In this document: piece by piece, positions 8,971-61,234 of the stretch
Position numbering within the stretch: position 1 is the stretch's first letter
Layout of the letters: each line of letters opens with the position of its first letter
Sequence record: OR836606.1
Strand: one strand, 5' to 3'
DNA length: 64,000 nt
Notes under the pieces: generated by a model
What the model was told of the DNA's origin: nothing
The model's database searches: none
Seen by the model: the letters and a program-made list of their open reading frames with translations, nothing else
Program-made: the position numbers and the translations under genes

Positions 8971-11900
8971 TTGAAATATCTTAATAGATTAAAAAATCTT
9001 AAATTCTATTCAATATCTGGATATAAAATTAAAGCTATTGATGAAGAAATCGAAGATAAGAAAAAAGATCAGTTAGTTATTTATAAAGGTTTTAAAGAAA
9101 ATTCATTTACTGATTTTTTAAATAGTGGATTATTATATCATCAGAATTTTAAGAATATCTATATTCCGAGATTGTATAGAACTAGAAATAGAAGAACTAG
9201 ATTATTAACAAATATAACAGATTATCAAAAAGAGATTAAATCTAAATCTTACAAACAGTATAGAGTTGAAAGAAATGAGAAATTATTTAAAGGTAGAAAC
9301 TATATTGTTGATTCAACTAAATTTATTGATTTAGAAGATAAATCATTAATAACTAGAAATTTTAATACAGTATTGGATTCAATTAAATCAACTTTTAATT
9401 CTTTAAATAATGCAGAAGATTACAATAATTTATTATATGTAATTAATGTTGATGGGTATAATAAGTCTTCTCAAGAAGCAATTAGACCTAATACAAAAGA
9501 TTTCATGTCAAGCTTATTCATGATGATTAAGAATCAAGAGGAATTACCTCATGGTGAAAATCAAAATATTAATTTATTATTTGTCTCATTAGATAATGGA
9601 ATAATGTTTAAATTTGATTATAAAGATTATAATAAACTTAATATGAGACTTAGACAAAGATTAAGAAGAATCATTGATACTAATACACAAGCATTAGATA
9701 CTGATGAAATTAGTAAAGTTGAAGATGATGACAATACTGAAGCTGTAGATGGAGTAATTAAAAAGAAAGCATTTGATAATGTAGGAACAATTGATCCTAT
9801 CGAAGCTCAGAACGATGAAGCTGAATATGAAAATGATGAACAGTTAGAAAAAATATCTAATAAAATAGATTCTACAATAAGTTATATTAGATCATTAGAC
9901 AATACTGAAATGGATGTTGATGATGAATATAATATAGCTATGATAATTGAAAAAGAATTAAATAATAATAAAGATTTAATTGATATTGATACTGAAACAT
10001 TATATTCGGATGTATTGGATAAAAATGATTCATTTAAATCAATTAAGAGAAATATTAAAAATAAATCTAGTATTGGCGATGAAGCACTTAAAAATACTAA
10101 AAAGATATTAGCTTTATCCAAGAAACAAGATGAATACCTTAATGATTTAGAGGATTTTAGCTTTTCTGAAGATAAATTAATCGATAGAGAAATTAATGAA
10201 AATATTAATAATATTAATGAAGAGACTATTAATAATATTGCTTCTAATGATTTTGATGTTTCTTATATGCAAAAAACATTTAATAAAGACTTTATTGATA
10301 TAATGAAAAGCTTTAATGACAATGAAGATATTCCGGTATTTATTAATAAAATGAATATTGAAGATAATTCAGATAGTCAATCATTAAAAAATACAGTTAA
10401 AGTTCAATTTAGAAGTCCAGACGGTTTAACTCATAATGTTAAATTTGATGTTCCTAAAGTTATTGACGGTAAGTACATGAAGCTTAACGGTGGGAAAAAG
10501 ATATTAACTAAACAGTTAATGATGTGGCCAATCGTTAAATATAAACCGGATTGTTCATAACAGTCCACTTTTATAGCAATATGAAAGTAAAAAGAATATT
10601 AATTGCTGAAACGGTTTTATTAAATTAATCAGCATCAATTATTATTAATTGTTCAACGACTAAATATATTCACTCTTATTGAGAGTATGATATAGTCTGT
10701 GCTCTAAATTGATAATTTAGAGATTGTATAAAATACAGATAAAAAATTCATATCAGAATTTCTCTTAACATATTTTTATAATATGATTAGGAGGTGAAAT
10801 TAAATGATAAACAAAAACGGAAAATTAGTTAAATCTTTCAAAACTAGAATATACCCAAATCAAGATCAAATAAATTATTTCAATAAATGTTTTGGTGTAA
10901 GAAGAAAAATATGGAATATGGCTTTAGAAGACTATCAAAATAAAGATGATGACGCTCAATTTAGCGGATTTGATTATCAGAAAAAATTAAATAATGAAAT
11001 TTATGAATCTGGTAAATATCCCTATCTTTATGAAGTTAATAGCATGGTTAGACAAGAAGCTTTAAAAGACTTAGATGAATCTTTTAAAATATATAGAAAT
11101 GAACAAAAGAAAGCTAGAAAGTCTAAAGATGCAATTGACACTGAAAAATTTAAACCCAAGTTTAAAAAGAAAAAACATTCTAATGAGTCATTTAGATTTA
11201 TGGTTAAAGATAAGAAATATTTACCTATTAGATTTTTATCTAAGAAATGGATAAAAATTTCCGTAATGAAAGGAATTAAACCTTTTATAATCAAATCTAA
11301 AGAATCAATGAAGTTTATTAATTCTAATAACCATAGATTTCTCACTTACACTATAAGCAGAAAGAATGAAAAATATTATATTTCTGTAACTTATGAGATA
11401 AACAATTATAAGAAACAGAGATTGAATAATGATTCAATTGGTATTGATATGGGTATGAAAACACCATTAGTATGTGTAGATTCAAATGGTCAAACATTTG
11501 AATTTAAAATCCCACATAACTTATGGAAACAAGAAAGAAAAACTGAGAAATTGCAAGCAAAACTATCAAGTAAGAAATATTATTCAAAATCATATTACAA
11601 AACTTTAAAACAATTAAGAAAATCTTATAATAGAGAGTGTAATATATTAGAAGATTATAGAGATAAAATCACTAATTGGTTAGTTAAAAACTATAAAGTG
11701 ATTAATATTGAACCATATAGTCATAAAGCTTCTAATAATTTAAGAAATGCTCGTAGATCTAATAGAAGATTTGGCAAATATGATTTCCTAGAAAAATTAA
11801 AGTATAAGATTTTACAATATGATAATGAATTGAATATAATTACTAAAAAGAAAACTACACAAACATGCTCATCATGCGGTTATGTAAGAACTAACGATGA

Positions 11901-14900
11901 GAAACTTGTCATTGGCGATGATATTCATGATTGTCCTAAATGTAATGTAGTTCTTGATAGAGATTTAAATGCGGCTAAAAATATTCTAGATTTAAAATAT
12001 GTTTAATTAATTTCACAAAATAAAAGATATGAGAGTCGCCTGCGGTCAGCGGGAGACGATAAACGGGTGATAAGCTAATGTCTGATTAGCTTTACAAGGA
12101 GTACAGAGGTACCTCTATACGTTAGTCACTGAGCCAAGTGTATTTTATACAAGATCTTGCCTTTAGATTTAATTATTTAAAATCAAGATTTAACAAGACA
12201 GACAGTATGGATTACAACTAACTATAATAAATTCATTATAGAAAAATTTGGTTATAAAGAAAATGCTGAAACTGAATGGATCAAGAAAGTTATTGAAGAT
12301 GACCAAGTTATAGATTATATTGAAAATAAATCTAACTTATCTGTTAAAAAAGGTAATGCTTCTTTAATCAATAATAAATATGTAACTTCAGTTATTTATA
12401 ATAGCTTATCTAGAAATATATTAAATTTCCAAGATGACACTAATGTACTTGAATTTAATCAAAGAAGTTTATTAGCGATGATTTCTGATAGTGCTAGTTT
12501 ATCTAAAATTGATTATGATCAAGATAAATATTTCCCTATTGGTTATAATATTAATAAATCTAAATTAATATTAGCAGATAAGACAGAATCTGTTATGTAT
12601 GAATGTAGTAAGACTAATATTAAGTCAATGGAAATGAATATATTTGATTACCTTATTGATAAATTAGACAATGAAGTTGACTTTGGTGTTATTGATAAGA
12701 AATTCAGTAAGAATATTCAGGCTAATAAGACTATGGCATTTTCACGTGTTAAAATTACTAATAAATTAGTACCTACAATTTTATTATTAGGTTTCTATAA
12801 AGGTTTAACTAGTATTCTTGATCTTTATGAAGTTGATTATAAATTTACTACTGAGAATGAAAGAATTAGTATTCATGATAAAAAGAATAAAATTAAATTC
12901 CAAGATGGTTATTTAATATACTCTACTGATAAATTAAGATATGATTTATTAATGTCTGGATTAACTGTATTGCCTACATCACAATACAATTTCAGTGATT
13001 TTGAAACTGAAACACCTTACTTAGAATATTTCAATGATAAATTCTACAGTCGTAATGTTGGTAAAGGTATCAAAAATACTATGGATTTAGCAATGGATCC
13101 TATTACTAAAGAAGTATTAAGGGATTTAAAACTTCCTGATAATATGGTTGAATTATTACTATTAGCTAATACGATGTTAGAAGATGTATCAGCTAGAGAT
13201 CATAATGATATGGGAATTTATCGTGTACGTGGCCCAGAACAAATTAATGCATTATTATATAAAATGATGGCAAATGCTTATAAAGAATATTCAGATTCTT
13301 ATAATAATAAAAATCCTAAGAATATTTCAGTTAAACAAGATCAATTAATTAAAACTATTATGGAACAACCTACAGTGGATGAAGTATCTGATTTAAACCC
13401 TAACTTAGAAATAGATAAGATGACTTCTGTTACATTTAAAGGACCTGCTGGACGTAACTCTGAACAATCATATGAACCTGATATTCGTTCTTACGATGAA
13501 AGTATGCAAGGTATATTAGGAATAAGTACACCTGACAGTAATAAGGTAAATTACTTGCCCTTAATTACAGTAATGTAATTCAATGAAAATTTATTAATTG
13601 CTAAAAATCTTTATTAAGATGATCAGCATCACTAAAAATAGTGTTCAACGACTAAATATAAATTCACTTATTATAAGTGTAAGATATAGTCTAATCTGTA
13701 TTAGATTATTATAGAATAATACAAATGAGGTATTGTCAGACAACTTTCATATGATACACAAATTAAATCTACTCGTGGTTATACTGATGGTAGTAAAAAA
13801 GATGTAAGTGATACAGCTTTATACACACCATTAGAATTATTAAATCCATATACTAGTAGACATGCGGATATACGAAATGAGGTAAGTTCGCAATAAAATT
13901 ATTTAATTGCTGGAAAGCTTTATTAAGTTAATCAGCATCAGTTAAAGACTGTTCAACGACTAAATAATAATTACCATTTATATGGTGAAGATATAGTCTA
14001 ATCTATATTAATTTAATATAGAATAATAAAAATGTCACCTCGTATAGGAATGACTGGTATTAAAATGAATGCCCTTTATTATAGTAATATAATATACGAA
14101 AAATATTTAATTGCTAAGAATCTTTAATTAAAGAAATTAGCATCAAATTAATACAATTTGTTCAACGACTAAATAATATTATACTTATTTAAGTATTTGA
14201 TATAGTCTGATCTGTATTAAATTAATACAGTTAACATAAATGACTCAAGCTAAGCATTTAATTGCTACTAAAACAAATGACCGTCCATTAGTTGGTTCCG
14301 GTGTAGATAAATCTTTAGCCTACCAAATTTCAGACACATTTGCTTTTAAAGCTAAAGAAGATGGAAAAGTAACTTCTATTAATGAGAAAACAGGATTAAT
14401 GATTGTTGAATATATTAATGGAGATAAAGATGTAATTGATATATCTGAAAAACTTGCTAAAAACTCTAATGGCGGATTTTATCAAAATAATAAACTTACA
14501 CCGCAATTTGAAGTAGGTAAGAAATTTAATAAAGGACAAATATTAGCTAAAAATGATAATTACTTTGCAGGTTCTGGTAGTAATAATGATATTCAATTCA
14601 CTGCTGGTAAATTATCTAAAGTTGCAGTAGCTAGCTCATATGGTATTATAAATGCCTTTCATTATAGTAATATAATGTATAAAAAATATTTAATTGCTGG
14701 AAAGTCTTTATTAAGACAATCAGCATCATTAATTTATAATGTTCAACGACTAAATAATATTATACTTAATTAATATGTATTTGATATAGTCTAATCTGTA
14801 TTGATTAACTCTTAATGCAGTTAATATAAATGACTTATGAGGACAGTTCTATTATTTCTAATAGTATGTCTGAAGCTATGTCAACTAAAGTTACTATGAA

Positions 14901-52165: not shown

Positions 52166-54712
52166 TTATTCTTTAGTTAAAGAGTATAAAGCTTGTACCA
52201 TATTATTTATGATAATTAGACTATATCTTCTTAGTAATATATTTAGTCGTTGAACAACTTATATTAAGTTGATGCTGATTAATCTAATAAGATACTTCCA
52301 GCAATTAATATTATTTATTGAGAGCATACAAGCATGTTACTCTCATTACCCAAATTACGTACTGAATTACCAGTGTAGTTTAGGTAGTTAGTTTTCTTAT
52401 TAAGAAGTTTATTAGCTTCTTTATTAGCCTCTACAGTCCAGAGAGATCTGATAGAAATCATATCCATTTACGTTATCTATATTAAGATAATATAGATCAG
52501 ACTATATCTTTACTTTAATAAGCATATTATATTTAGTCGTTGAACACTATTTGTAGTGATGCTGATTAAGATAATAATCTTTCCCAGCAATTAATAATAT
52601 TTAAATACGGCAATATAAATTACCGTCAAACGTTTATGTTATCTATAATAAATGATATCATAGACCAGACTATATCATCATCTCAATTGAGATATATTAT
52701 ATTTAGTCGTTGAACAACTTATATGAAGCTGATGCTGATTGCTCTAATAAGAGTTTTCAGCAATTAATAATATTTTCATTCTTAAATCACTTTAAGAAGC
52801 GACTTTTTCAAATCGGCACCTAACGCTATTTAATTTATAATTAAATTTGGACTATATCATAAACCTAAATATTAGGTTCCCTCACACTTCGGGAATTCAT
52901 TTCCCTACTCTACTCACTTCGTTATAGTATTTCAACTATACTTATTCTCTATATAAGAGTTACATTTATTGTTTTCGATAGTCTCTGAACGTTTATCCAT
53001 CATGTGGATACTTCGCTGCTAGACTTTCCCATTATTAAATACCCTTAGCATTTTCAGCATAGGTCATCAAAGAGATTTTTTCTGTCTTTCGACTGCATGT
53101 CACGCTATCCATTACTGGCATACGTTGTAGCTCTCTAAGCATTAGGGTTTACAAGCAATTCATAAGGTATTTTTTATCCTATATTACTATAAGACTGGAG
53201 CGTAAGTTACTCCGGCATAACTGTTGTGTATAATAGCGGTATCTATAAATACATCTTCATCAACAGGATATTCATGAACAACTTTAGGATAATCTTTAAG
53301 TACAATATCGTCTAAAGTAATTTCAGGAATTGTATCAACTGTAGTCAATATTTTAATTTTGGCAGGTGCAACATTCAAGAAATTTTCGCAAACTATATTA
53401 AATTAATACAGATCAGACTATATCATTACCTACTTTTAGGTATATTATATTTAGTCGTTGAACAAGTTTAATTGACTTGATGCTAATTAACCTATTAAAG
53501 TCTTTTAGCAATTAATAATATTTTCATTCTTAAATCACTTTAAGAAGCGACCAGTGTATTAATCGGATATCTTGAATAAACCACATGCTTATCTTCACAT
53601 ATTTCTGTAGCAGCTATATAAAGTAAATCAATTACAGTAAAAGTTCTACCTAAAGTATTTTCAAATAATTTAACTTTATGACGTTTACCTTGTCTATCAT
53701 TTACATATATAGGACTAAATCTTTCATTAGGATCCTTAATAAAGAATTCTAACATATTCTTAATAGCTTTATCATCAAACTGTTCATATACTTCTTCTAA
53801 TGATAATTCATTTTCATCAGTTCCAGTAGCGGTTTGGAAGGCATCTTTGTGGATTTCAATAAAATCGATAATGTATTTGCTAAAGAAAGGTAAGAATAAA
53901 GTAACTAATTGAGTTAATGGTACCCCTAACTGACCAAATTCAATTTGCATTTCATCCCATTTATTTGAATTAATCTTAGGTGAAGAAATAACTGAGCGAG
54001 TACTGTTATCTACCGTCTTACCTAAAATATTTCTTTGCATCATACCAGTTTTACCTGATAGTTCTCCTGAAGTTAATTTAACGTATATTTCAAATAATTT
54101 ATTTTGAATATTATATTTAGTCGTATTAGCTACAAAGTCAAATGAATTAAAACTAATTGAATCTACAGATCTTAAGATGCTTGCATACATATCATTTATT
54201 TCTTCAGTATCTTGAATTTCCCCTGAAGTTTCATTAGGATTAAAGTCACGATAGAAAGCAGGTATTACGAGCCATTTATCTGTGAATATTCTATCTTTAG
54301 GAGTATTTTTAAGCATATCAATTTTTTCATTTCGGATACGAGAATCATTTTTTCTAAATTTAAGATTTTCATAATTATCGTATAAGAAATTTAATCCAGT
54401 TTCACCATTTTCATCTGGAACTAATTGTCCTTTCTCAATTTTAAAGTAATCAGAACCTTGAATACATAGATCTATATTCTTATCTAATTCTCTCATAGCT
54501 TTATAAGCTACAGGATTCAAGTATTTGCCACCTAAATTAATCCAACCTATATTATTCTTTCTTTCATCAGTACCTATTAAACCAAATATTTCATATGAAA
54601 ATAAACCATCTTCTTTAGGTAAAGTTCCTGAATCAAAGAAAATAGGATTAGTAACTTCTTTAGCTCCATAAGCTGTAATAACTTGATCAACATTAACCAT
54701 ATCTATTTTCAT
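52166..54712 (-). CDS. rpoC: RNA polymerase beta-prime N-terminal (catalytic) subunit, probably virion RNAP, spliced from 6 exons, 503 aa
   Basis: Exons 54712-53562, 53388-53210, 52825-52812, 52630-52622, 52464-52339 and 52198-52166 total 1512 nt and are in frame. They yield RYPI|ENFLN, HNSYAG|ALGAD|FDG|DMISIR and NLGNES|VQALYSLTKE. GKTVDNSTRSVIS motif. Confidence 0.88.
52199..52338 (-). ncRNA. In10: mini group I intron, 140 nt (shortest in the window)
   Basis: P1 GAGAGU/GCUCUC; P10 CUUGUAU with 3' exon GUACAAG; core motifs. Confidence 0.92.
52465..52621 (-). ncRNA. In11: mini group I intron, 157 nt
   Basis: P1 ACGGU/GCCGU; junction GGT|GAT. Confidence 0.92.
52631..52811 (-). ncRNA. In12: mini group I intron, 181 nt
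   Basis: P1 CGAU/GUCG with GAAA loop; junction GAT|TTT. Confidence 0.9.
52826..53209 (-). ncRNA. In13: full-size ORF-less group I (IA-type) intron, 384 nt; 5' site probably after GGAG
   Basis: GAAUUGCUUG..UAGCAGC..UUCAGAGACUA..UGAUAUAGUCC with P7 extensions; IGS CUUACG-CUCC; 5' boundary uncertain by 1 nt. Confidence 0.8.
53389..53561 (-). ncRNA. In14: mini group I intron, 173 nt
   Basis: P1 CGAU/GUCG; junction CCG AT|C GAA; P4 GCUA/UAGC; sister of In12. Confidence 0.9.
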
Positions 54713-57050: not shown

Positions 57051-60000
57051 TTAGAATTTAATCATATTAGATACAAATGAACTATTTGAAGATTCCAATA
57101 CTCTAACACCAATAGATTCAATAATATCTTTACCTGGTTTAATATGATCTTCAATCATACTATCATAGTCAATAAAAGGTCTAAACTCTTCAGGAATTGT
57201 ATTACCTTCAACTGCAATTACATTTAAACCGTTTTTAACTAAACTTTCATTCTTAAATACTTCTCTAAATCTATCTAAAGTATCTTCATCAGTTATCTTA
57301 TTTTTAATATCTCCAAATGTACTAATATTCAATTTAACTGCTAATATCTTAGCAGGTAATGCTATTTCTTTTTCTGGGAACATTATATTCCATGCTAAAG
57401 CAGCTCTATATGCCATTTGAGAATAAGGGTCTTTATATACCTCAGCATTATTAGCTTTAAACGGTTTTAAGAATTCGATTTCTCCATTATCTAATGATTT
57501 CTTAATCATTTCTTCTATATCTTTAAATTTACGTATTATCTTAATACGATCTACACCGGTTTTATTTTCTAAAATATCTTTTTGTAATATTTCAGTAAAT
57601 AGTTCTCTAATACGTTTATTAGTATTAACTTTTCTAATAGCCATACCTTTAACATCTAAATCTGGAGGTTGAATTAAATTACCCTCTTGTTGAATTACTG
57701 ATGATGCATAAGTTTTCTTTTTATCAGTTGTTAATTGTTTATCAAGTAAAACATTTTTATTAGCTTTATTAAATTAATAAAGATTAGACTATATCTTATA
57801 CTTATATTAAGTACATTTATATTTAGTCGTTGAACTTAATTTCTTAAGCTGCTGATTTAATTAATGAACTATTCCAGCAATTAATAAATTTATCTTTCTG
57901 TATATCGCTATACAACGGAGCATTAACTTGATAATACTCATTTTTCATTGATATTAAACCTAAATGTTCTTCCTCTAATCCTACATCTTTACAGAATCTA
58001 TAGTAAGACAATTCTAATAATTTAGTTATTTGATAGTTAATAATAGATATATTACTTACACGTTGTTCTAATTTATCCTCTAAACCATTCTCTGCAATTG
58101 GAAAATCTTCAGGTTTTAAAGATTTAAATTTTTCGTATAACGGATCTAAGTGAACAAAGTTCATTTATGTTAGCTGTATCAAATATAATACAGATCAGAC
58201 TATATCTTCTTTAGAAATATATTTAGTCGTTGAACTTAATTTCTTAAGCTGCTGATTTGATTAATAAATCATTCCAGCAATTAATATTTTTTATTGACAG
58301 CAATTTTTTATCACAACTGTCAGTATCTATAGTTAATACGCTTCTACGTTTCTTGTAATTCATTCTATACATTCTATTATAATCTTGATAATTATATATA
58401 ACCCAATCTTTTAATATTTCAAATAATTCATCTAATAATGGAATCATATCTTCAGGAGGATCATTTGGATCTAAGAAATCTTCTCTGCCAGTCATTTTAC
58501 TAATTTTATTATCAAATATATCGGTATGATCAATTAACCCAAATAAATTATTTTTGAAATATACTTTATTTTTATCTTCTTGACTTAATTTACTAAATAC
58601 TTCTTCTAACTTAAGAAAATCTTCTTCACTATAATCTTCTTCAACATTAGAAACTAAACCTTCTAAAATTTCTTTATCAGTTGGAATTGATTTTATCTTA
58701 ATATCATGATCTTCATATTTTTCACTAATTATTCTTAATATATAATGATATATTTCATCAATCTTCATGAAAAAGATTTTACCGCCAATAAATCTTTCTA
58801 AAGCTATCGCTGAAGTAGTTACAATATCAACTGCTATATAAATTCGTGAATTTAATTTAATTAATTCGAATTTATTCGACTTCGTCATTACTTTTACTTA
58901 CTTTGCACTTTAAGTTTTTCGTTATAAACTACTTCAACATAAAGTGTCAACCAAAGCAGAGGTTAAAGCTCTTAAGTCATCACATTTGGACATTCAAGAG
59001 AATTTAAATCTAGTTAGCCTGCCCAACAAAACGCTTACCGTACATTTTGAGGTTGACAGCAGCGTTATAATCTCTATCCATTTTATTTCCACAATCACAC
59101 TTATACCATCTATCTGATAACTTCATCTTATTTTCTTTAGTTAAGACTTGACCACAATTAGAACATAATTGAGTTGATGGGAACCATCTATCTGCTACAA
59201 TAATAGTATTACCATTGCTTTCAGCTTTTTGTTTTAATAAAGTTCTGAATTGTCTCCAATTCATTGCAGAAATAGATTTAGACAAATTTCTATTTTTAAT
59301 CATATTTGAAACTTTAAGATCTTCAATTGTAATATACTGATAATTTTTAATTAAGTTAGTAGTTATTTTATGAAGATAATCTTTTTTAATGTTATTAATT
59401 CTCATCCATATTTTTTGTATTTTGGTTTTCAATACATTGTATTTGTTAGAACCATAAACTTTACGAGATAATCTTTTTTGATAGTACTTAATCTTATTGT
59501 ATAGTGGAATCAATTTATCATTTAATGAATGATATTTCTTAAATTTACCGAAATCATCATTAATGATAGCTAAATCTTTTACACCTAAATCAATACCAAC
59601 ATGGCTATTGTTATGAATTAAGCTCTTATTATTATCAACTTTCATTACTATTGAAGCGAAATATTTTCCAGCATATTTAGATATAGTAACTTCTTGAATG
59701 GAATTATAATTAAACGGGATAGATTCTTTCATTTTAATTAATGAATTAATTCCTTGAAGTTTTAATTTATTATTTTTATCGCCTTTAATTTGTAATGAAT
59801 AATTATTCTTCTTATAGAACCTTGTACTTAATTTAGAATGTTTTTTAGATTTAAATCTCGGATACTTACCGTAACCTTTCCACATCATATTAAAAGCTTT
59901 ACCTAAATCTTCAGTTGCTGTGTCCATAACTTGAGATATTTGATCTTTTTCCCAATCTTCTTTACATTTTTTAAGTTCATCACGAACTTTCCTATGTGTT

Positions 60001-61234
60001 GGTTTTGGAAGAGATGTATCAAGTTGATGAGCATTCCACATTTGTTTCCATTTATTAAGCCCTTTATTATAAATATATCTAGAATATCCAAATGCTTGAT
60101 TAAATACTTCTTTTTGTTCTTTATTTGGTTTCAATTCGATTTTAATAGATTTGTACATGTGATTTCACCTCCTTCAAATATATAATATATACTTAAAGTT
60201 AGTGATGAATTTTAATTAAATTAAACTCACGAATTCCTGATTTAGTGTTTCCACATCAGTTAAATAGCAAGACTATATCATATTCTATCAGAATGATAGA
60301 ACCCTCGCACTTCAGGAATATTATTTCCCTACTCTACTCACTTCACATAGTATTTCAACTATGCTTATTCAGGCGTTAATCCTGTGCTTTCGATAGTCGT
60401 TGAACGTTCATCCATCATGTGGATGCTTCGCTGCTAGATTTTCCATTAGTCCACCCTTAGCACTTAATTTACATTAAGCTTTTATTTCAGCCTAGGTAAT
60501 CTTAGAGTATTTTTTCTGATTTTCATCTGCTTTCACGCTATCCATTACTGGTATACGTTGTAGCTCTCTAAGCTTTAGGAGTTTACAAGCAATTCACGAG
60601 GTTTGCTCACTTCTTTCATGAATTAAACTAACTTTAATTCACTATGAAGTAAGGGAGTTTTGATTAACTATTTTAAAATAATTTAAGTGAGCAATTCGTG
60701 TTAAATCACTTAAATTATATTAAACTAAAATAGTTTCTTTTCTCCACTATAAGTAGTTGCTGGACCTGAATTAGCATCATAGAATGTACTATTTTTCTGT
60801 ATCATAGCACCGTAATAACTGTTAGCTAAGATCTTAATTGTTTTTTGTTCATTCATATATTTATCATGTAAAACATCATCTTTACCTTTATAAATAAACA
60901 TATTGTGCTTAGCTACTTTACGAGAATCTATAAAGTCTTTTAACATTTCCGCATTTAAATTTTTTCTTTGTGATTGAGGCTGATAAATAGAACCAGAACC
61001 AGTTACAATTAAATTATTATTAATAATTTGTCTTAAGGTTGTATCTACATTCATTTTTTGTCCTGATATTTCTATTAAAGCTGGATCTAAATGTTTTTTA
61101 ATATATTCTCTACAGGCATTAATTAGTTTCTCATCATCAATATCAGGTTTTCTTATTTTAATTAATTTAATTAAATTTTCTAAATAACCCGTTATAGCCC
61201 TTTTACGTTCATATTTATTATCTTGATTAGACAT
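57051..61234 (-). CDS. Split family-B DNA polymerase, C-part (motifs B and C), spliced from 4 exons, 644 aa
   Basis: Exons 61234-60742, 58830-58316, 58161-57936 and 57751-57051 total 1935 nt and are in frame. KILANSYYG, TYSG-V|DIVTT, IDTDS|NFVHL, MKNE-F|LLDK..KKTYA. Confidence 0.88.
57752..57935 (-). ncRNA. In15: mini group I intron, 184 nt
   Basis: P1 GAGU/GCUC; P2 UGUAUA-GCGA-UAUACA; core motifs. Confidence 0.9.
58162..58315 (-). ncRNA. In16: mini group I intron, 154 nt, directly after DTDS
   Basis: P1 UGACAGU/GCUGUCA; core motifs. Confidence 0.92.
58831..59050 (-). ncRNA. Putative omegaRNA scaffold of In17 TnpB
   Basis: Structured region overlapping the tnpB 3' end (CTCTT/AAGAG stem; AACTA pairing with TGAAG-TAGTT), continuing to the 3' splice site. 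Confidence 0.55.
59010..60158 (-). CDS. tnpB: TnpB RNA-guided endonuclease (intron-encoded)
   Basis: KIELKPNKEQ HTH; RuvC VGIDLG, ITIEDL, DRDYNAA; Zn finger CSNC..CDC; GGAGGTG RBS. Confidence 0.93.
   Translation of the reverse strand: MYKSIKIELKPNKEQKEVFNQAFGYSRYIYNKGLNKWKQMWNAHQLDTSLPKPTHRKVRDELKKCKEDWEKDQISQVMDTATEDLGKAFNMMWKGYGKYPRFKSKKHSKLSTRFYKKNNYSLQIKGDKNNKLKLQGINSLIKMKESIPFNYNSIQEVTISKYAGKYFASIVMKVDNNKSLIHNNSHVGIDLGVKDLAIINDDFGKFKKYHSLNDKLIPLYNKIKYYQKRLSRKVYGSNKYNVLKTKIQKIWMRINNIKKDYLHKITTNLIKNYQYITIEDLKVSNMIKNRNLSKSISAMNWRQFRTLLKQKAESNGNTIIVADRWFPSTQLCSNCGQVLTKENKMKLSDRWYKCDCGNKMDRDYNAAVNLKMYGKRFVGQAN
60182..60197 (-). promoter_or_regulatory. Early-type promoter-like motif inside In17, upstream of tnpB
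   Basis: Minus strand TAAGTATATATTATA versus the recurring TAAATATATATTATAA. Confidence 0.5.

What the first reader, a model, noticed from the sequence alone, without database searches (positions are those of the whole stretch)
58811..60746. Second, independent TnpB-intron chimera in the DNA polymerase gene
Seen: In17 pairs a different, full-size ribozyme with a divergent TnpB, again without TnpA. It is inserted just after motif B (TYSG-V|DIVTT). The long L1 region (about 60740-60660) is a stack of hairpins, and the motif CACGAATT occurs near both ends (about 60690 and 58841-58848), which could be transposon-end remnants. Inference: TnpB was captured twice by two intron classes in one phage. 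The predicted TAM is ..TGGAG and the predicted guide is TTGATATTGTAACTACTTCA. A G-rich site is more like IS607-type IStrons than the TTGAT-type.
Basis: partly seen in the sequence, partly recalled or inferred. Interest (0 to 1): 0.85.

Follow-up and report, generated by a model that had tools for sequence, protein, structure and literature searches.

The report
TnpB-carrying IStron in phage polymerase gene
[quoted passage not shown] This kind of element is already known, but here it sits in essential genes of a lytic phage, where RNA-guided intron homing could be tested directly.

Summary
Window 60741-58831 (minus strand, 1911 nt) is a clean insertion in the family-B DNA polymerase gene of Staphylococcus jumbo phage LY01. 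Seven relatives without the intron read straight through the site.

The insert has four parts:
- a group IA2 ribozyme (weak Rfam hit, strong covariation);
- a long AU-rich inverted-repeat stem that encloses an intact tnpB gene (dN/dS about 0.15);
- a roughly 197-nt structured 3' RNA that ends exactly at the boundary;
- no tnpA.

Nine independent insertions of the same family sit after TGGAG, AGGAG or TAGAG. A homologous element in Listeria phage LPJP1 still carries the IS607 serine recombinase.

The "captured twice in one phage" reading is not supported. In17 belongs to a pre-existing group B IStron lineage. It resembles CsISt1 (AG/CAG ends, TnpB only) and is widespread in AR9/S6-like jumbo phages. 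LY01 holds at least four relatives. The other TnpB in the window is unrelated (31% identity).

Unexpectedly, all relatives' empty sites lack the TAM (GGTG, CGTG). LY01's exons are synonymously recoded exactly at those positions.

Splicing and cleavage are inferred, not shown. This is a new member of a known kind.

The parts
58831..60741 (-). Whole element (In17): a TnpB-only group B (IS607-type) IStron, 1911 nt
   Evidence: The boundaries come from relatives without the intron. They also come from where homology to LY01 copy 2 and to LPJP1 stops.
60742..60746 (-). Last 5 nt of the 5' exon, TGGAG. This is the predicted TAM, the TnpA target motif and the exon strand of P1. AG at 60743-60742 is the shared core dinucleotide.
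   Evidence: Nine independent family insertions follow TGGAG (6), AGGAG (2) or TAGAG (1).
60654..60657 (-). Internal guide sequence CUCC, pairing with exon GGAG to form P1
   Evidence: The MFE fold shows the pairing. The Rfam alignment starts here. In copy 2 the pairing is AGAG/CUCU, a compensatory change.
60662..60737 (-). Its apical loop holds CACGAATT (60700-60693).
   Evidence: z -5.6; self-inverted 60727-60669
60606..60653 (-). P2 hairpin
   Evidence: LPJP1 has a different sequence here that also forms a hairpin (read directly).
60271..60601 (-). Ribozyme core. P3 60601-60596/60308-60303; P4 60591-60588/60435-60432; extended P5 domain; P6/P6a 60431-60404; P7 60398-60393/60276-60271; P8 60302-60282. 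The P7.1/P7.2 region lies between P7 and P3'.
   Evidence: Covariation on 7 homologues: 96.2% of cells paired against 33-42% in slid controls, and 31 of 61 pairs with compensatory changes. RF00028 alignment.
60212..60235 (-). 5' inverted repeat (AATTCGTGAGTTTAATTTAATTAA). With the 3' repeat it forms the long AU-rich stem that encloses tnpB.
   Evidence: 24 nt, with one G-U position. The equivalent stem in L008 has a different sequence.
60166..60174 (-). Shine-Dalgarno sequence (AAGGAGGTG) of tnpB
   Evidence: read directly
59010..60158 (-). tnpB, 382 aa, intact
   Evidence: Pfam; invariant D190/E279/D363 and CxxC...CxC; dN/dS 0.14-0.17 against the other LY01 copies; closest solved structures are 8IAZ and ISDra2 TnpB
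58831..59027 (-). Structured 3' RNA, the predicted omega-RNA scaffold. It overlaps the last tnpB codons. Helices: 59024-59020/58992-58988, 59011-59008/59000-58997, 58978-58974/58882-58878, 58969-58962/58897-58890, 58875-58867/58846-58838.
   Evidence: Covariation on 8 homologues: 94.5% paired against 31-55% in slid controls, and 19 of 31 pairs compensatory.
58841..58864 (-). 3' inverted repeat. It can pair either with the 5' repeat (intron fold) or with 58875-58867 (terminal omega-RNA hairpin), and the two foldings exclude each other.
58831..58832 (-). Right-end core dinucleotide AG. G 58831 is the terminal intron G (3' splice site). The element ends ...TTTATATAGCAG.
   Evidence: Eleven family right ends finish in ..(T)ATAGCAG..ATGACAG or ..AAGGCAG.
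58811..58830 (-). First 20 nt of the 3' exon (TTGATATTGTAACTACTTCA), the predicted guide and target
   Evidence: Inferred from TnpB/IStron architecture (bioRxiv 10.1101/2023.11.20.567912). It is identical in MarsHill, S6 and PALS_2 and has 1-3 mismatches in four others.

Best explanation
In17 is a non-autonomous, TnpB-only group B (IS607-type) IStron inserted in frame in the family-B DNA polymerase gene of the jumbo phage LY01.

RNA level. The 5' ~580 nt fold into a group IA2 ribozyme. Its guide sequence CUCC pairs with the exon end GGAG. A 24-bp AU-rich inverted-repeat stem loops out tnpB and brings the 3' end (…AUAGCAG) to the core. Splicing at 60742|60741 and 58831|58830 restores the polymerase reading frame.

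Alternative RNA fate. Alternatively, the last ~197 nt of the same transcript, plus ~16-20 nt of the 3' exon, fold as a guide (omega) RNA for TnpB. The intron fold and the guide-RNA fold compete for the same 3' repeat.

DNA level. TnpB with this RNA would cut polymerase alleles that lack the insert. Such alleles carry the TAM (consensus TGGAG) directly followed by TTGATATTGTAACTACTTCA. Repair from an IStron-bearing genome then keeps or spreads the element during replication or co-infection.

Mobility. The element cannot transpose on its own because LY01 has no IS607 serine recombinase.

Shown here: the boundaries, the anatomy, conserved RNA structures, an intact TnpB under purifying selection, and family membership.
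Inferred: splicing, guide-RNA processing, the TAM, and cleavage or homing.
For: - Clean insertion with in-frame exon joining. This holds here, in LY01 copy 2 inside the large terminase gene, and in scaffold L008.
- Ribozyme: RF00028 hit and covariation. Homologous introns without ORFs occur in nrd, polymerase and capsid genes of other phages.
- P1 covaries with the exon: GGAG/CUCC here and AGAG/CUCU in copy 2.
- Inverted-repeat stem.
- Conserved 3' RNA that ends exactly at the boundary.
- TnpB domains and catalytic residues and dN/dS about 0.15.
- Listeria phage LPJP1 has the homologous element with the same ends plus a Resolvase-domain TnpA.
- The TnpB clade sits next to the C. botulinum phage c-st group B IStron TnpB. 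The left-end starts are alike: TAACGAAACAG, TAACTAACAG and AAAAGAAAC.
- These features match those published for group B IStrons and for CsISt1. PMC4227781 gives the G-ending 5' exon, the long AU-rich inverted-repeat stem with a 3' direct repeat, and AG/CAG ends. 10.1101/2023.11.20.567912 and PMC13521648 give the conflict between guide RNA and intron.
Against: - There is no transcript or biochemical data.
- The Rfam score is below the gathering threshold (21 against 50 bits), and standard-size scans miss it.
- P1 is only 4 bp and lacks the usual U-G pair.
- The 3' RNA folded alone is no more stable than shuffles (z -0.47).
- It matches no Rfam family.
- All seven known polymerase alleles without the insert carry TGGTG, not TGGAG, at the TAM. 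The only known potential recipients may therefore be poor substrates.
- The clade has uracil-substituted DNA (10.1101/2020.12.14.422802). TnpB has not been shown to work on such DNA.
Confidence: 0.8

Rival explanations
1. Domesticated or decaying relic. The ribozyme still splices because the polymerase depends on it. The TnpB/guide-RNA module no longer cuts DNA, or it has another role such as regulating splicing or transcription, so no homing occurs.
For: - There is no TnpA in LY01.
- All known empty sites lack the consensus TAM.
- The LPJP1 TnpB has an in-frame TGA.
- TnpB is reported to repress IStron splicing (10.1101/2023.11.20.567912).
- The family includes copies without a ribozyme and mini copies without an ORF.
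Against: - The TnpB ORF is intact with all catalytic residues.
- dN/dS is 0.14-0.17 across three LY01 copies that have diverged to dS about 0.6.
- The 3' RNA structure is conserved by compensatory changes.
- Relatives lack the inserts at both sites, so LY01 gained them.
Confidence: 0.15
2. One reading: a resident LY01 group I intron locally captured a stray tnpB gene, as a second and independent capture within this phage.
For: - LY01 holds a close ORF-less relative of the same ribozyme in its RNA polymerase gene (78% identity).
- It also holds a different TnpB behind a different, small ribozyme at 10590-12200.
Against: - The complete arrangement, with the same ends, exists in Listeria phage LPJP1 with TnpA. 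It also exists in distant metagenomic jumbo phages.
- Ribozyme, inverted repeat, TnpB and 3' RNA are all homologous along the full length between In17 and LY01 copy 2 (81% over 1.9 kb).
- The ORF-less RNA polymerase intron has IStron-type ends (GGAG|TAAC...ATAG|). It looks like a deletion derivative, not a precursor.
Confidence: 0.04
3. The insert is not spliced. It splits the polymerase into two separately translated polypeptides: 61234-60725, and 58888-58244 starting at the ATG at 58888.
For: - ORFs with start codons exist on both sides.
- LY01's depositors annotated them as separate hypothetical proteins.
Against: - There is no convincing ribosome-binding site before 58888.
- The N-terminal piece ends 5 codons into the insert.
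- The break lies 25 codons after motif B, in a contiguous domain that is uninterrupted in seven relatives.
- The ribozyme core is conserved by covariation.
- The exon end matches the guide sequence.
Confidence: 0.03

Closest known systems
CsISt1, group B IStron of Clostridium sporogenes (Tourasse et al. 2014, PMC4227781)
   Same: Both carry ORF B (TnpB) only. Both are inserted after an AG site and end in CAG rather than the group B consensus GG/CGG. Both have an IA2 ribozyme at the 5' end and belong to the IS607 lineage.
   Different: The host is a lytic uracil-DNA jumbo phage, not a bacterium. The targets are essential replication and packaging genes. The sequence was not compared directly because CsISt1 was not available in the tools. 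Lengths are 1911 against 2369 nt.
CboIStron / CbISt1-4 of C. botulinum and its phages c-st and D-1873 (PMC4227781; bioRxiv 10.1101/2023.11.20.567912; PMC13521648)
   Same: - The order of parts is the same: ribozyme, (tnpA), tnpB, guide RNA.
- The 5' exon ends in G, which pairs with C of the guide sequence.
- A long AU-rich inverted-repeat stem is present.
- The guide-RNA fold and the intron fold compete.
- The right end mimics the TAM except at position -3 (TGGG against TCGG there; TGGAG against AGCAG here).
- The TnpBs are neighbours in the tree, and the left-end starts are similar.
   Different: The core dinucleotide is AG, not GG. The predicted TAM is TGGAG, not TGGG. TnpB identity is only about 36%. 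The 3' RNA is not alignable by eye. In17 has no tnpA.
BcISt1 of Bacillus cereus (group B; splicing after G shown in vivo, PMC4227781)
   Same: The tnpA is truncated or absent while tnpB is intact. The total length is about 1.9 kb. ORF-less derivatives keep one repeat plus the 3' inverted repeat, as the LY01 RNA polymerase intron does.
   Different: BcISt1 has GG/CGG ends and sits on a bacterial chromosome.
CdISt1 and other group A (IS200/IS605-type) IStrons
   Same: They combine a group IA2 ribozyme with TnpB and a guide RNA.
   Different: Group A inserts after TTGAT-type pentanucleotides, ends in TCAG, has a U at the 5' splice site, and has subterminal palindromes for a Y1/HUH TnpA. None of these is present here.
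Classical phage group I introns with protein homing endonucleases (T4 td/nrdB, Twort, SPO1, AR9)
   Same: The ribozyme subclass is IA2. They sit in DNA-metabolism and structural genes of lytic phages. The presumed spread is by double-strand-break repair in co-infections.
   Different: The mobility gene here is an RNA-guided TnpB with a guide taken from the flanking exon. It is not an HNH, GIY-YIG or LAGLIDADG protein.

Membership tests
Group B (IS607-type) IStron | Group I (IA2) ribozyme occupying the 5' part of the element | tested here: met
   RF00028 full-length alignment at 21.2 bits, below the gathering score. Covariation: 96% paired and 31 of 61 compensatory pairs.
Group B (IS607-type) IStron | Inserted after a G-ending GG/AG site, so the 5' exon ends in G (not U), paired to C of the guide sequence | tested here: met
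   The exon ends ...TGGAG. P1 is GGAG/CUCC. Nine family sites end in GAG.
Group B (IS607-type) IStron | 3' terminus CGG (CAG in the CsISt1 variant), with the same dinucleotide at both junctions | tested here: met
   The element ends ...ATAGCAG, and AG is present at both junctions. This is the CsISt1-type variant, not the canonical CGG.
Group B (IS607-type) IStron | Long, very AU-rich inverted-repeat stem enclosing the ORFs, plus a 3' direct repeat that can pair with the 3' inverted repeat | tested here: met
   A 24-bp stem, 60235-60212 with 58864-58841. The alternative hairpin is 58875-58867/58846-58838.
Group B (IS607-type) IStron | IS607-family genes: a serine-recombinase TnpA and/or TnpB | tested here: met
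   TnpB is present. TnpA is absent here and from LY01. The homologous LPJP1 element has a Resolvase-domain TnpA.
Group B (IS607-type) IStron | Self-splicing that restores the host gene | not testable with these tools
   Only in-frame exon joining can be shown, at three independent sites.
TnpB / omega-RNA RNA-guided nuclease | RuvC D-E-D triad and zinc finger intact | tested here: met
   D190, E279, D363, C332, C335, C354 and C356 are invariant. PDB relatives are 8IAZ and ISDra2 TnpB.
TnpB / omega-RNA RNA-guided nuclease | Structured guide-RNA scaffold overlapping the 3' end of tnpB and ending at the right end, with the guide taken from the flank | tested here: met
   A conserved structure of five helices, 19 of 31 pairs compensatory, ends at the boundary. 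Processing and guide use were not testable.
TnpB / omega-RNA RNA-guided nuclease | TAM-dependent cleavage of the empty site | not testable with these tools
   The TAM is inferred from the 5' flanks only. The empty sites of known relatives carry TGGTG.
Group A (IS200/IS605-type) IStron | Target TTGAT/TTTAT/ATTAT, 3' end TCAG, U at the 5' splice site, subterminal palindromes, Y1 TnpA | tested here: not met
   The flank is TGGAG, the end is GCAG, and the exon ends in G. The relative's TnpA is a serine recombinase.
Group I intron with a protein homing endonuclease | Intron ORF of the HNH, GIY-YIG, LAGLIDADG or VSR type | tested here: not met
   The only ORF is TnpB.

The most novel reading that the evidence does not exclude
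In17 represents an IStron lineage restricted to phages and adapted to AR9/S6-like uracil-DNA jumbo phages. In this lineage TnpB-only copies act as RNA-guided homing introns between co-infecting phages, working on dU-containing DNA. Invasion of sites that lack the TAM is accompanied by synonymous recoding of the last exon codons (Gly GGT to GGA in the polymerase, Arg CGT to AGA in the terminase). This recoding creates the motif that the TAM, the recombinase core and P1 all share.
Probability: 0.3. Interest if true: 0.7.

Novelty: new member of a known kind. Interest (0 to 1): 0.5.

Why it matters
IStrons and their three-way compromise between intron, guide RNA and transposon ends are established. 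Whether TnpB-only IStrons spread by RNA-guided intron homing is explicitly still untested (review PMC13565253).

LY01 offers a culturable lytic system for that test. It has two full TnpB IStrons in essential genes (DNA polymerase and large terminase). Sequenced sister phages (MarsHill, S6, PALS_2) carry identical 20-nt targets but a one-base TAM difference.

The findings also show that this TnpB clade is common in jumbo-phage metagenome scaffolds of about 240 kb and was not found in bacterial genome representatives.

Two smaller questions follow. Can TnpB and an IS607 recombinase work on uracil-DNA? And why are the host exons recoded exactly at the TAM/P1 positions?

For annotation, LY01's polymerase and terminase are currently deposited as fragments labelled 'hypothetical protein'.

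Tried and rejected
- **Rfam at normal scale.** Scans of the whole window at gathering threshold and of 4.5 kb at E<=10 found no family at all. This was a filter effect. Short stretches recover RF00028 for In17 and for the neighbouring introns, one of them above gathering. 'No Rfam hit' was therefore rejected as evidence against a ribozyme.
- **Rfam on the 3' RNA.** Only chance-level hits.
- **Single-sequence fold of the 3' RNA.** Not better than shuffles. Only the alignment shows structure.
- **Search for close relatives by TnpB.** IMG/VR gave none. The bacterial genome representatives gave hits only at 38% identity or less, mostly Chlamydiae. JGI metagenomes gave five close loci.
- **The CUCC at 60581-60578 as the guide sequence.** Rejected, because it pairs within the P5 domain in the consensus fold.
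- **A U-ending 5' splice site (…TATAGT|).** Considered and rejected. It would need a non-G intron end or would break the reading frame, and it contradicts the empty sites.
- **TCGTGAATT at 60600-60592 as a transposon-end repeat.** Rejected, because it is the 3' part of the P3 5' strand, J3/4 and the start of P4.
- **Klebsiella phage Miami.** Its ribozyme match and its TnpB lie 3 kb apart and are separate features, not an IStron.


Full report
**Source and insertion site**

The window is part of Staphylococcus phage LY01 (OR836606.1, 258.9 kb, from a pig farm). Window coordinate plus 124000 gives the record coordinate. LY01 belongs to the S6/MarsHill group of AR9-like jumbo phages. These phages are reported to have uracil in place of thymine and many intron-split genes (bioRxiv 10.1101/2020.12.14.422802).

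On the minus strand the family-B ('divDNApol') polymerase gene is broken into several ORFs. MarsHill has no insert at the site in question and reads CCAGCAACTACTTATAGTGGTG|TTGATATTGTAACTACTTCA. So do S6, PALS_2, AH12, Machias, SA1 and PB50.

LY01 reads ...TATAGTGG[AG]AAAAGAAAC... on the left and ...TTTATATAGC[AG]TTGATATT... on the right. The insert is therefore 60741-58831, 1911 nt, with a two-base AG shared by both junctions. The spliced product reads TYSG-VDIVTT.

**The protein**

The only substantial ORF (60158-59010, 382 aa) follows a strong Shine-Dalgarno sequence. It matches all three TnpB Pfam domains. In an alignment with eleven homologues the RuvC residues D190, E279 and D363 and the four zinc-finger cysteines are invariant. 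The closest solved structures are 8IAZ and ISDra2 TnpB.

LY01 carries two more genes of the same lineage at 86% protein identity. Pairwise dN/dS among the three is 0.14-0.17 at dS 0.56-0.70. The protein has therefore been under purifying selection, and the copies are not recent duplicates.

No tnpA lies in the element. LY01 is absent from the 80 phage records that match the serine recombinase of the LPJP1 relative.

**The ribozyme**

Standard-size Rfam scans returned nothing, which at first looked like evidence against an intron. On a 631-nt stretch, RF00028 aligns over its full length to 60657-60248 at 21.2 bits, E 0.0041. The same effect hides the small introns next door, one of which scores 54.6 bits against a threshold of 50.

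Independent evidence is stronger. The core is 70-79% identical to sequences that interrupt nrd, polymerase III and capsid genes of Enterococcus, Lactococcus and Streptococcus phages. It also matches a sequence that directly follows a gene's end in an unannotated stretch of Klebsiella phage Miami.

I aligned seven homologues. The group I topology there comprises P3, P4, an extended P5 domain, P6/6a, the P7 pseudoknot and P8. It has 96.2% of cells paired, against 33-42% when partners are slid. Compensatory changes occur in 31 of 61 pairs, against 4-9 in the slid controls. None of 500 shuffles reached these values.

The 5' exon end GGAG pairs with CUCC at 60657-60654 to form P1. A P2 hairpin follows (z -5.6).

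**The ends and the 3' RNA**

A 24-nt repeat just after P9 (60235-60212) is complementary to 58864-58841, with one G-U position. Together they enclose tnpB. The last ~197 nt (59027-58831) begin inside the final tnpB codons.

I aligned eight homologues of this region. It forms five helices with 94.5% of cells paired, against 31-55% in the slid controls. Compensatory changes occur in 19 of 31 pairs. The region ends exactly at the element boundary in eleven family members...ATAGCAG|, with variants ...ATGACAG| and ...AAGGCAG|.

The terminal hairpin (58875-58867/58846-58838) and the inverted-repeat stem use the same 3' repeat, so the two folds exclude each other. This is the arrangement reported for the C. 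botulinum IStron, where guide-RNA folding and splicing are antagonistic (10.1101/2023.11.20.567912; PMC13521648). That this RNA is the TnpB guide, with the guide proper being the first ~20 nt of the 3' exon, is inferred from that architecture and was not shown here.

Three of the window's four CACGAATT octamers lie in the element. Two of them are the two arms of this stem. The third, in the P1 hairpin loop, is not conserved in relatives.

**Relatives and family assignment**

- Listeria grayi jumbo phage LPJP1 has a homologous element. It has the same left junction (AAGTGG[AG]|AAAAGAAGC), the same right end (TTTATATAGC[AG]|), and homologous ribozyme, TnpB (42% identity) and 3' RNA. It also carries a 209-aa Resolvase-domain protein between ribozyme and tnpB, making it a complete IS607-type IStron. 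Its tnpB has an in-frame TGA.
- LY01 copy 2 is colinear with In17 over 1.9 kb at 81% identity, and homology stops exactly at the predicted ends. It interrupts the large terminase gene in frame.
- LY01 copy 3 has only tnpB plus the right end, in an intergenic position.
- A 384-nt ORF-less relative of the ribozyme (53209-52826) sits in the virion RNA polymerase beta-prime gene. It has IStron-type ends, GCCGG[AG]|TAAC...AAAT[AG]|CG.
- Most of the best 120 database homologues (about 60% identity) lie on metagenomic scaffolds of 200-255 kb, and several of the listed contig lengths recur among hits. One such scaffold is syntenic with LY01 around the polymerase. These scaffolds contain both ribozyme-bearing copies in genes and 5'-truncated copies.
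- No close relative was found in IMG/VR or in the bacterial genome representatives.

In a TnpB tree, In17 and the two LY01 paralogues sit inside this jumbo-phage clade. Next come LPJP1 and Machias, then the group B IStron TnpB of C. botulinum phage c-st (support 90/85). The other TnpB of the window (10804-12006, 31% identity) lies far outside on a long branch.

These features coincide point by point with group B IStrons as defined by Tourasse et al. (PMC4227781). They fit CsISt1 especially well (ORF B only, AG site, CAG end). I therefore file In17 as a member of that family.

**TAM**

Nine independent insertion sites of the family have TGGAG (six), AGGAG (two) or TAGAG (one) immediately 5' of the element. 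This is far from chance in DNA of 25-31% G+C.

The right end mimics the motif except at -3 and -5 (AGCAG). This parallels the TGGG/TCGG self-avoidance described for the C. botulinum element.

Several insertions sit shortly upstream of a start codon, so the motif may coincide with Shine-Dalgarno sequences. LPJP1's sits 13 nt before the groL ATG. The right ends of L010, the L012 mini-element and L083 lie 1-10 nt before an ATG.

The same five bases must serve the recombinase core, the TAM and P1. The flank conservation alone cannot say which constraint dominates.

**An unexpected point**

All seven polymerase alleles without the insert carry TGGTG, not TGGAG. All four terminase alleles examined carry TCGTG where LY01 has TAGAG. 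Both differences are synonymous (Gly GGT to GGA, Arg CGT to AGA). They are confined to the last five exon bases, while the adjacent ~20 nt on either side are nearly identical to MarsHill. In copy 2 the guide sequence is CUCU, matching its AGAG exon.

Three explanations remain open:
- The motif came in with the element, through donor-derived junction bases or a very short co-conversion tract.
- It was selected afterwards, for P1 pairing and splicing.
- Insertion happened in rare pre-existing variants.

One consequence is that the sequenced sister phages, although their 20-nt target is identical or nearly so, may be poor substrates for In17's TnpB. By contrast, MarsHill's empty site for the RNA polymerase intron has a natural GGAG.

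**Verdict**

The evolutionary inference of a local 'capture' is not supported. In17 is one copy of a pre-formed IStron lineage circulating among uracil-DNA jumbo phages.

Splicing, guide-RNA maturation, TAM specificity and homing remain inferences. As a kind of element it is known, because IStrons, including TnpB-only ones and ones in C. botulinum phages, are already described.

Its interest lies in three things: the setting (essential genes of a culturable lytic phage with intron-less sister phages), the apparent restriction of the clade to phages, and the exon recoding at the TAM/P1 motif.

Noticed in passing
window 53209-52826 (-): A 384-nt ORF-less intron in the virion RNA polymerase beta-prime gene. 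Its core is 78% identical to In17's. It has IStron-type ends (GCCGG[AG]|TAACTTACGCTCC ... AAAT[AG]|CG). It is probably a deletion derivative (mini-IStron). MarsHill's empty site there is GCTGGAG|CACTCGG.
   Followed up: partly
window 52825-52812 (-): A 14-nt micro-exon (CGTTAGGTGCCGAT) lies between the intron above and a small group I intron (about 52811-52632). It corresponds to 14 nt of contiguous MarsHill exon.
   Followed up: partly
window 52200-53590 and 57650-58310 (-): Many very small (150-200 nt) group I introns share AATATTAATTGCTGG...AATCAGCATC...GTTCAACGACTAAATAT...GATATAGTC. The whole-window Rfam gathering scan reported none. On a short stretch one scores 54.6 bits, above the 50-bit threshold, so the filters cause false negatives in this AT-rich DNA.
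   Followed up: partly
window 10590-12200 (+): This is the other TnpB-ribozyme chimera. A small-class ribozyme (about 10590-10700) is followed by a 400-aa TnpB (10804-12006, 31% identical to In17's). After it comes a G+C-rich structured-looking 3' region (about 12030-12130). Its TnpB is a distant outlier in the tree.
   Followed up: partly
L004 2385-4329 (LY01 record about 229.9-231.9 kb, outside the window): A second full IStron of the same family (81% identity to In17) splits the large terminase gene in frame. LY01's exon reads TCTAGAG| where four relatives read TCTCGTG|, a synonymous Arg recoding.
   Followed up: yes
L005 2975-4320 (LY01 record about 62.2-63.5 kb, outside the window): A third copy consists of tnpB plus the right-end RNA only. 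It has no ribozyme and no 5' repeat, and it lies between genes. Similar 5'-truncated copies are common on the metagenomic jumbo-phage scaffolds (L083-L088).
   Followed up: partly
L003 254-2710 (Listeria phage LPJP1): A complete IS607-type IStron (ribozyme, serine recombinase, tnpB) is annotated only as 'hypothetical protein' and 'IS607 family transposase'. It lies between an SD-like GTGGAG and the groL start codon. Its tnpB has an in-frame TGA at the zinc-finger glycine codon.
   Followed up: partly
L012 about 660-1495 and 1501-2634 (JGI contig JGI24503J29689_10025773): An ORF-less mini-IStron (ribozyme, RBS, remnant of the tnpB 3' end, right end) ends 6 nt before the start codon of a second, complete tnpB. 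The arrangement is tandem or nested.
   Followed up: no
window 58244-58310 and 57844-58164 (-): The polymerase motif C (…TIDTDS) is followed immediately by another small intron. LY01's polymerase is deposited as five separate 'hypothetical protein' ORFs plus a 'transposase'.
   Followed up: no
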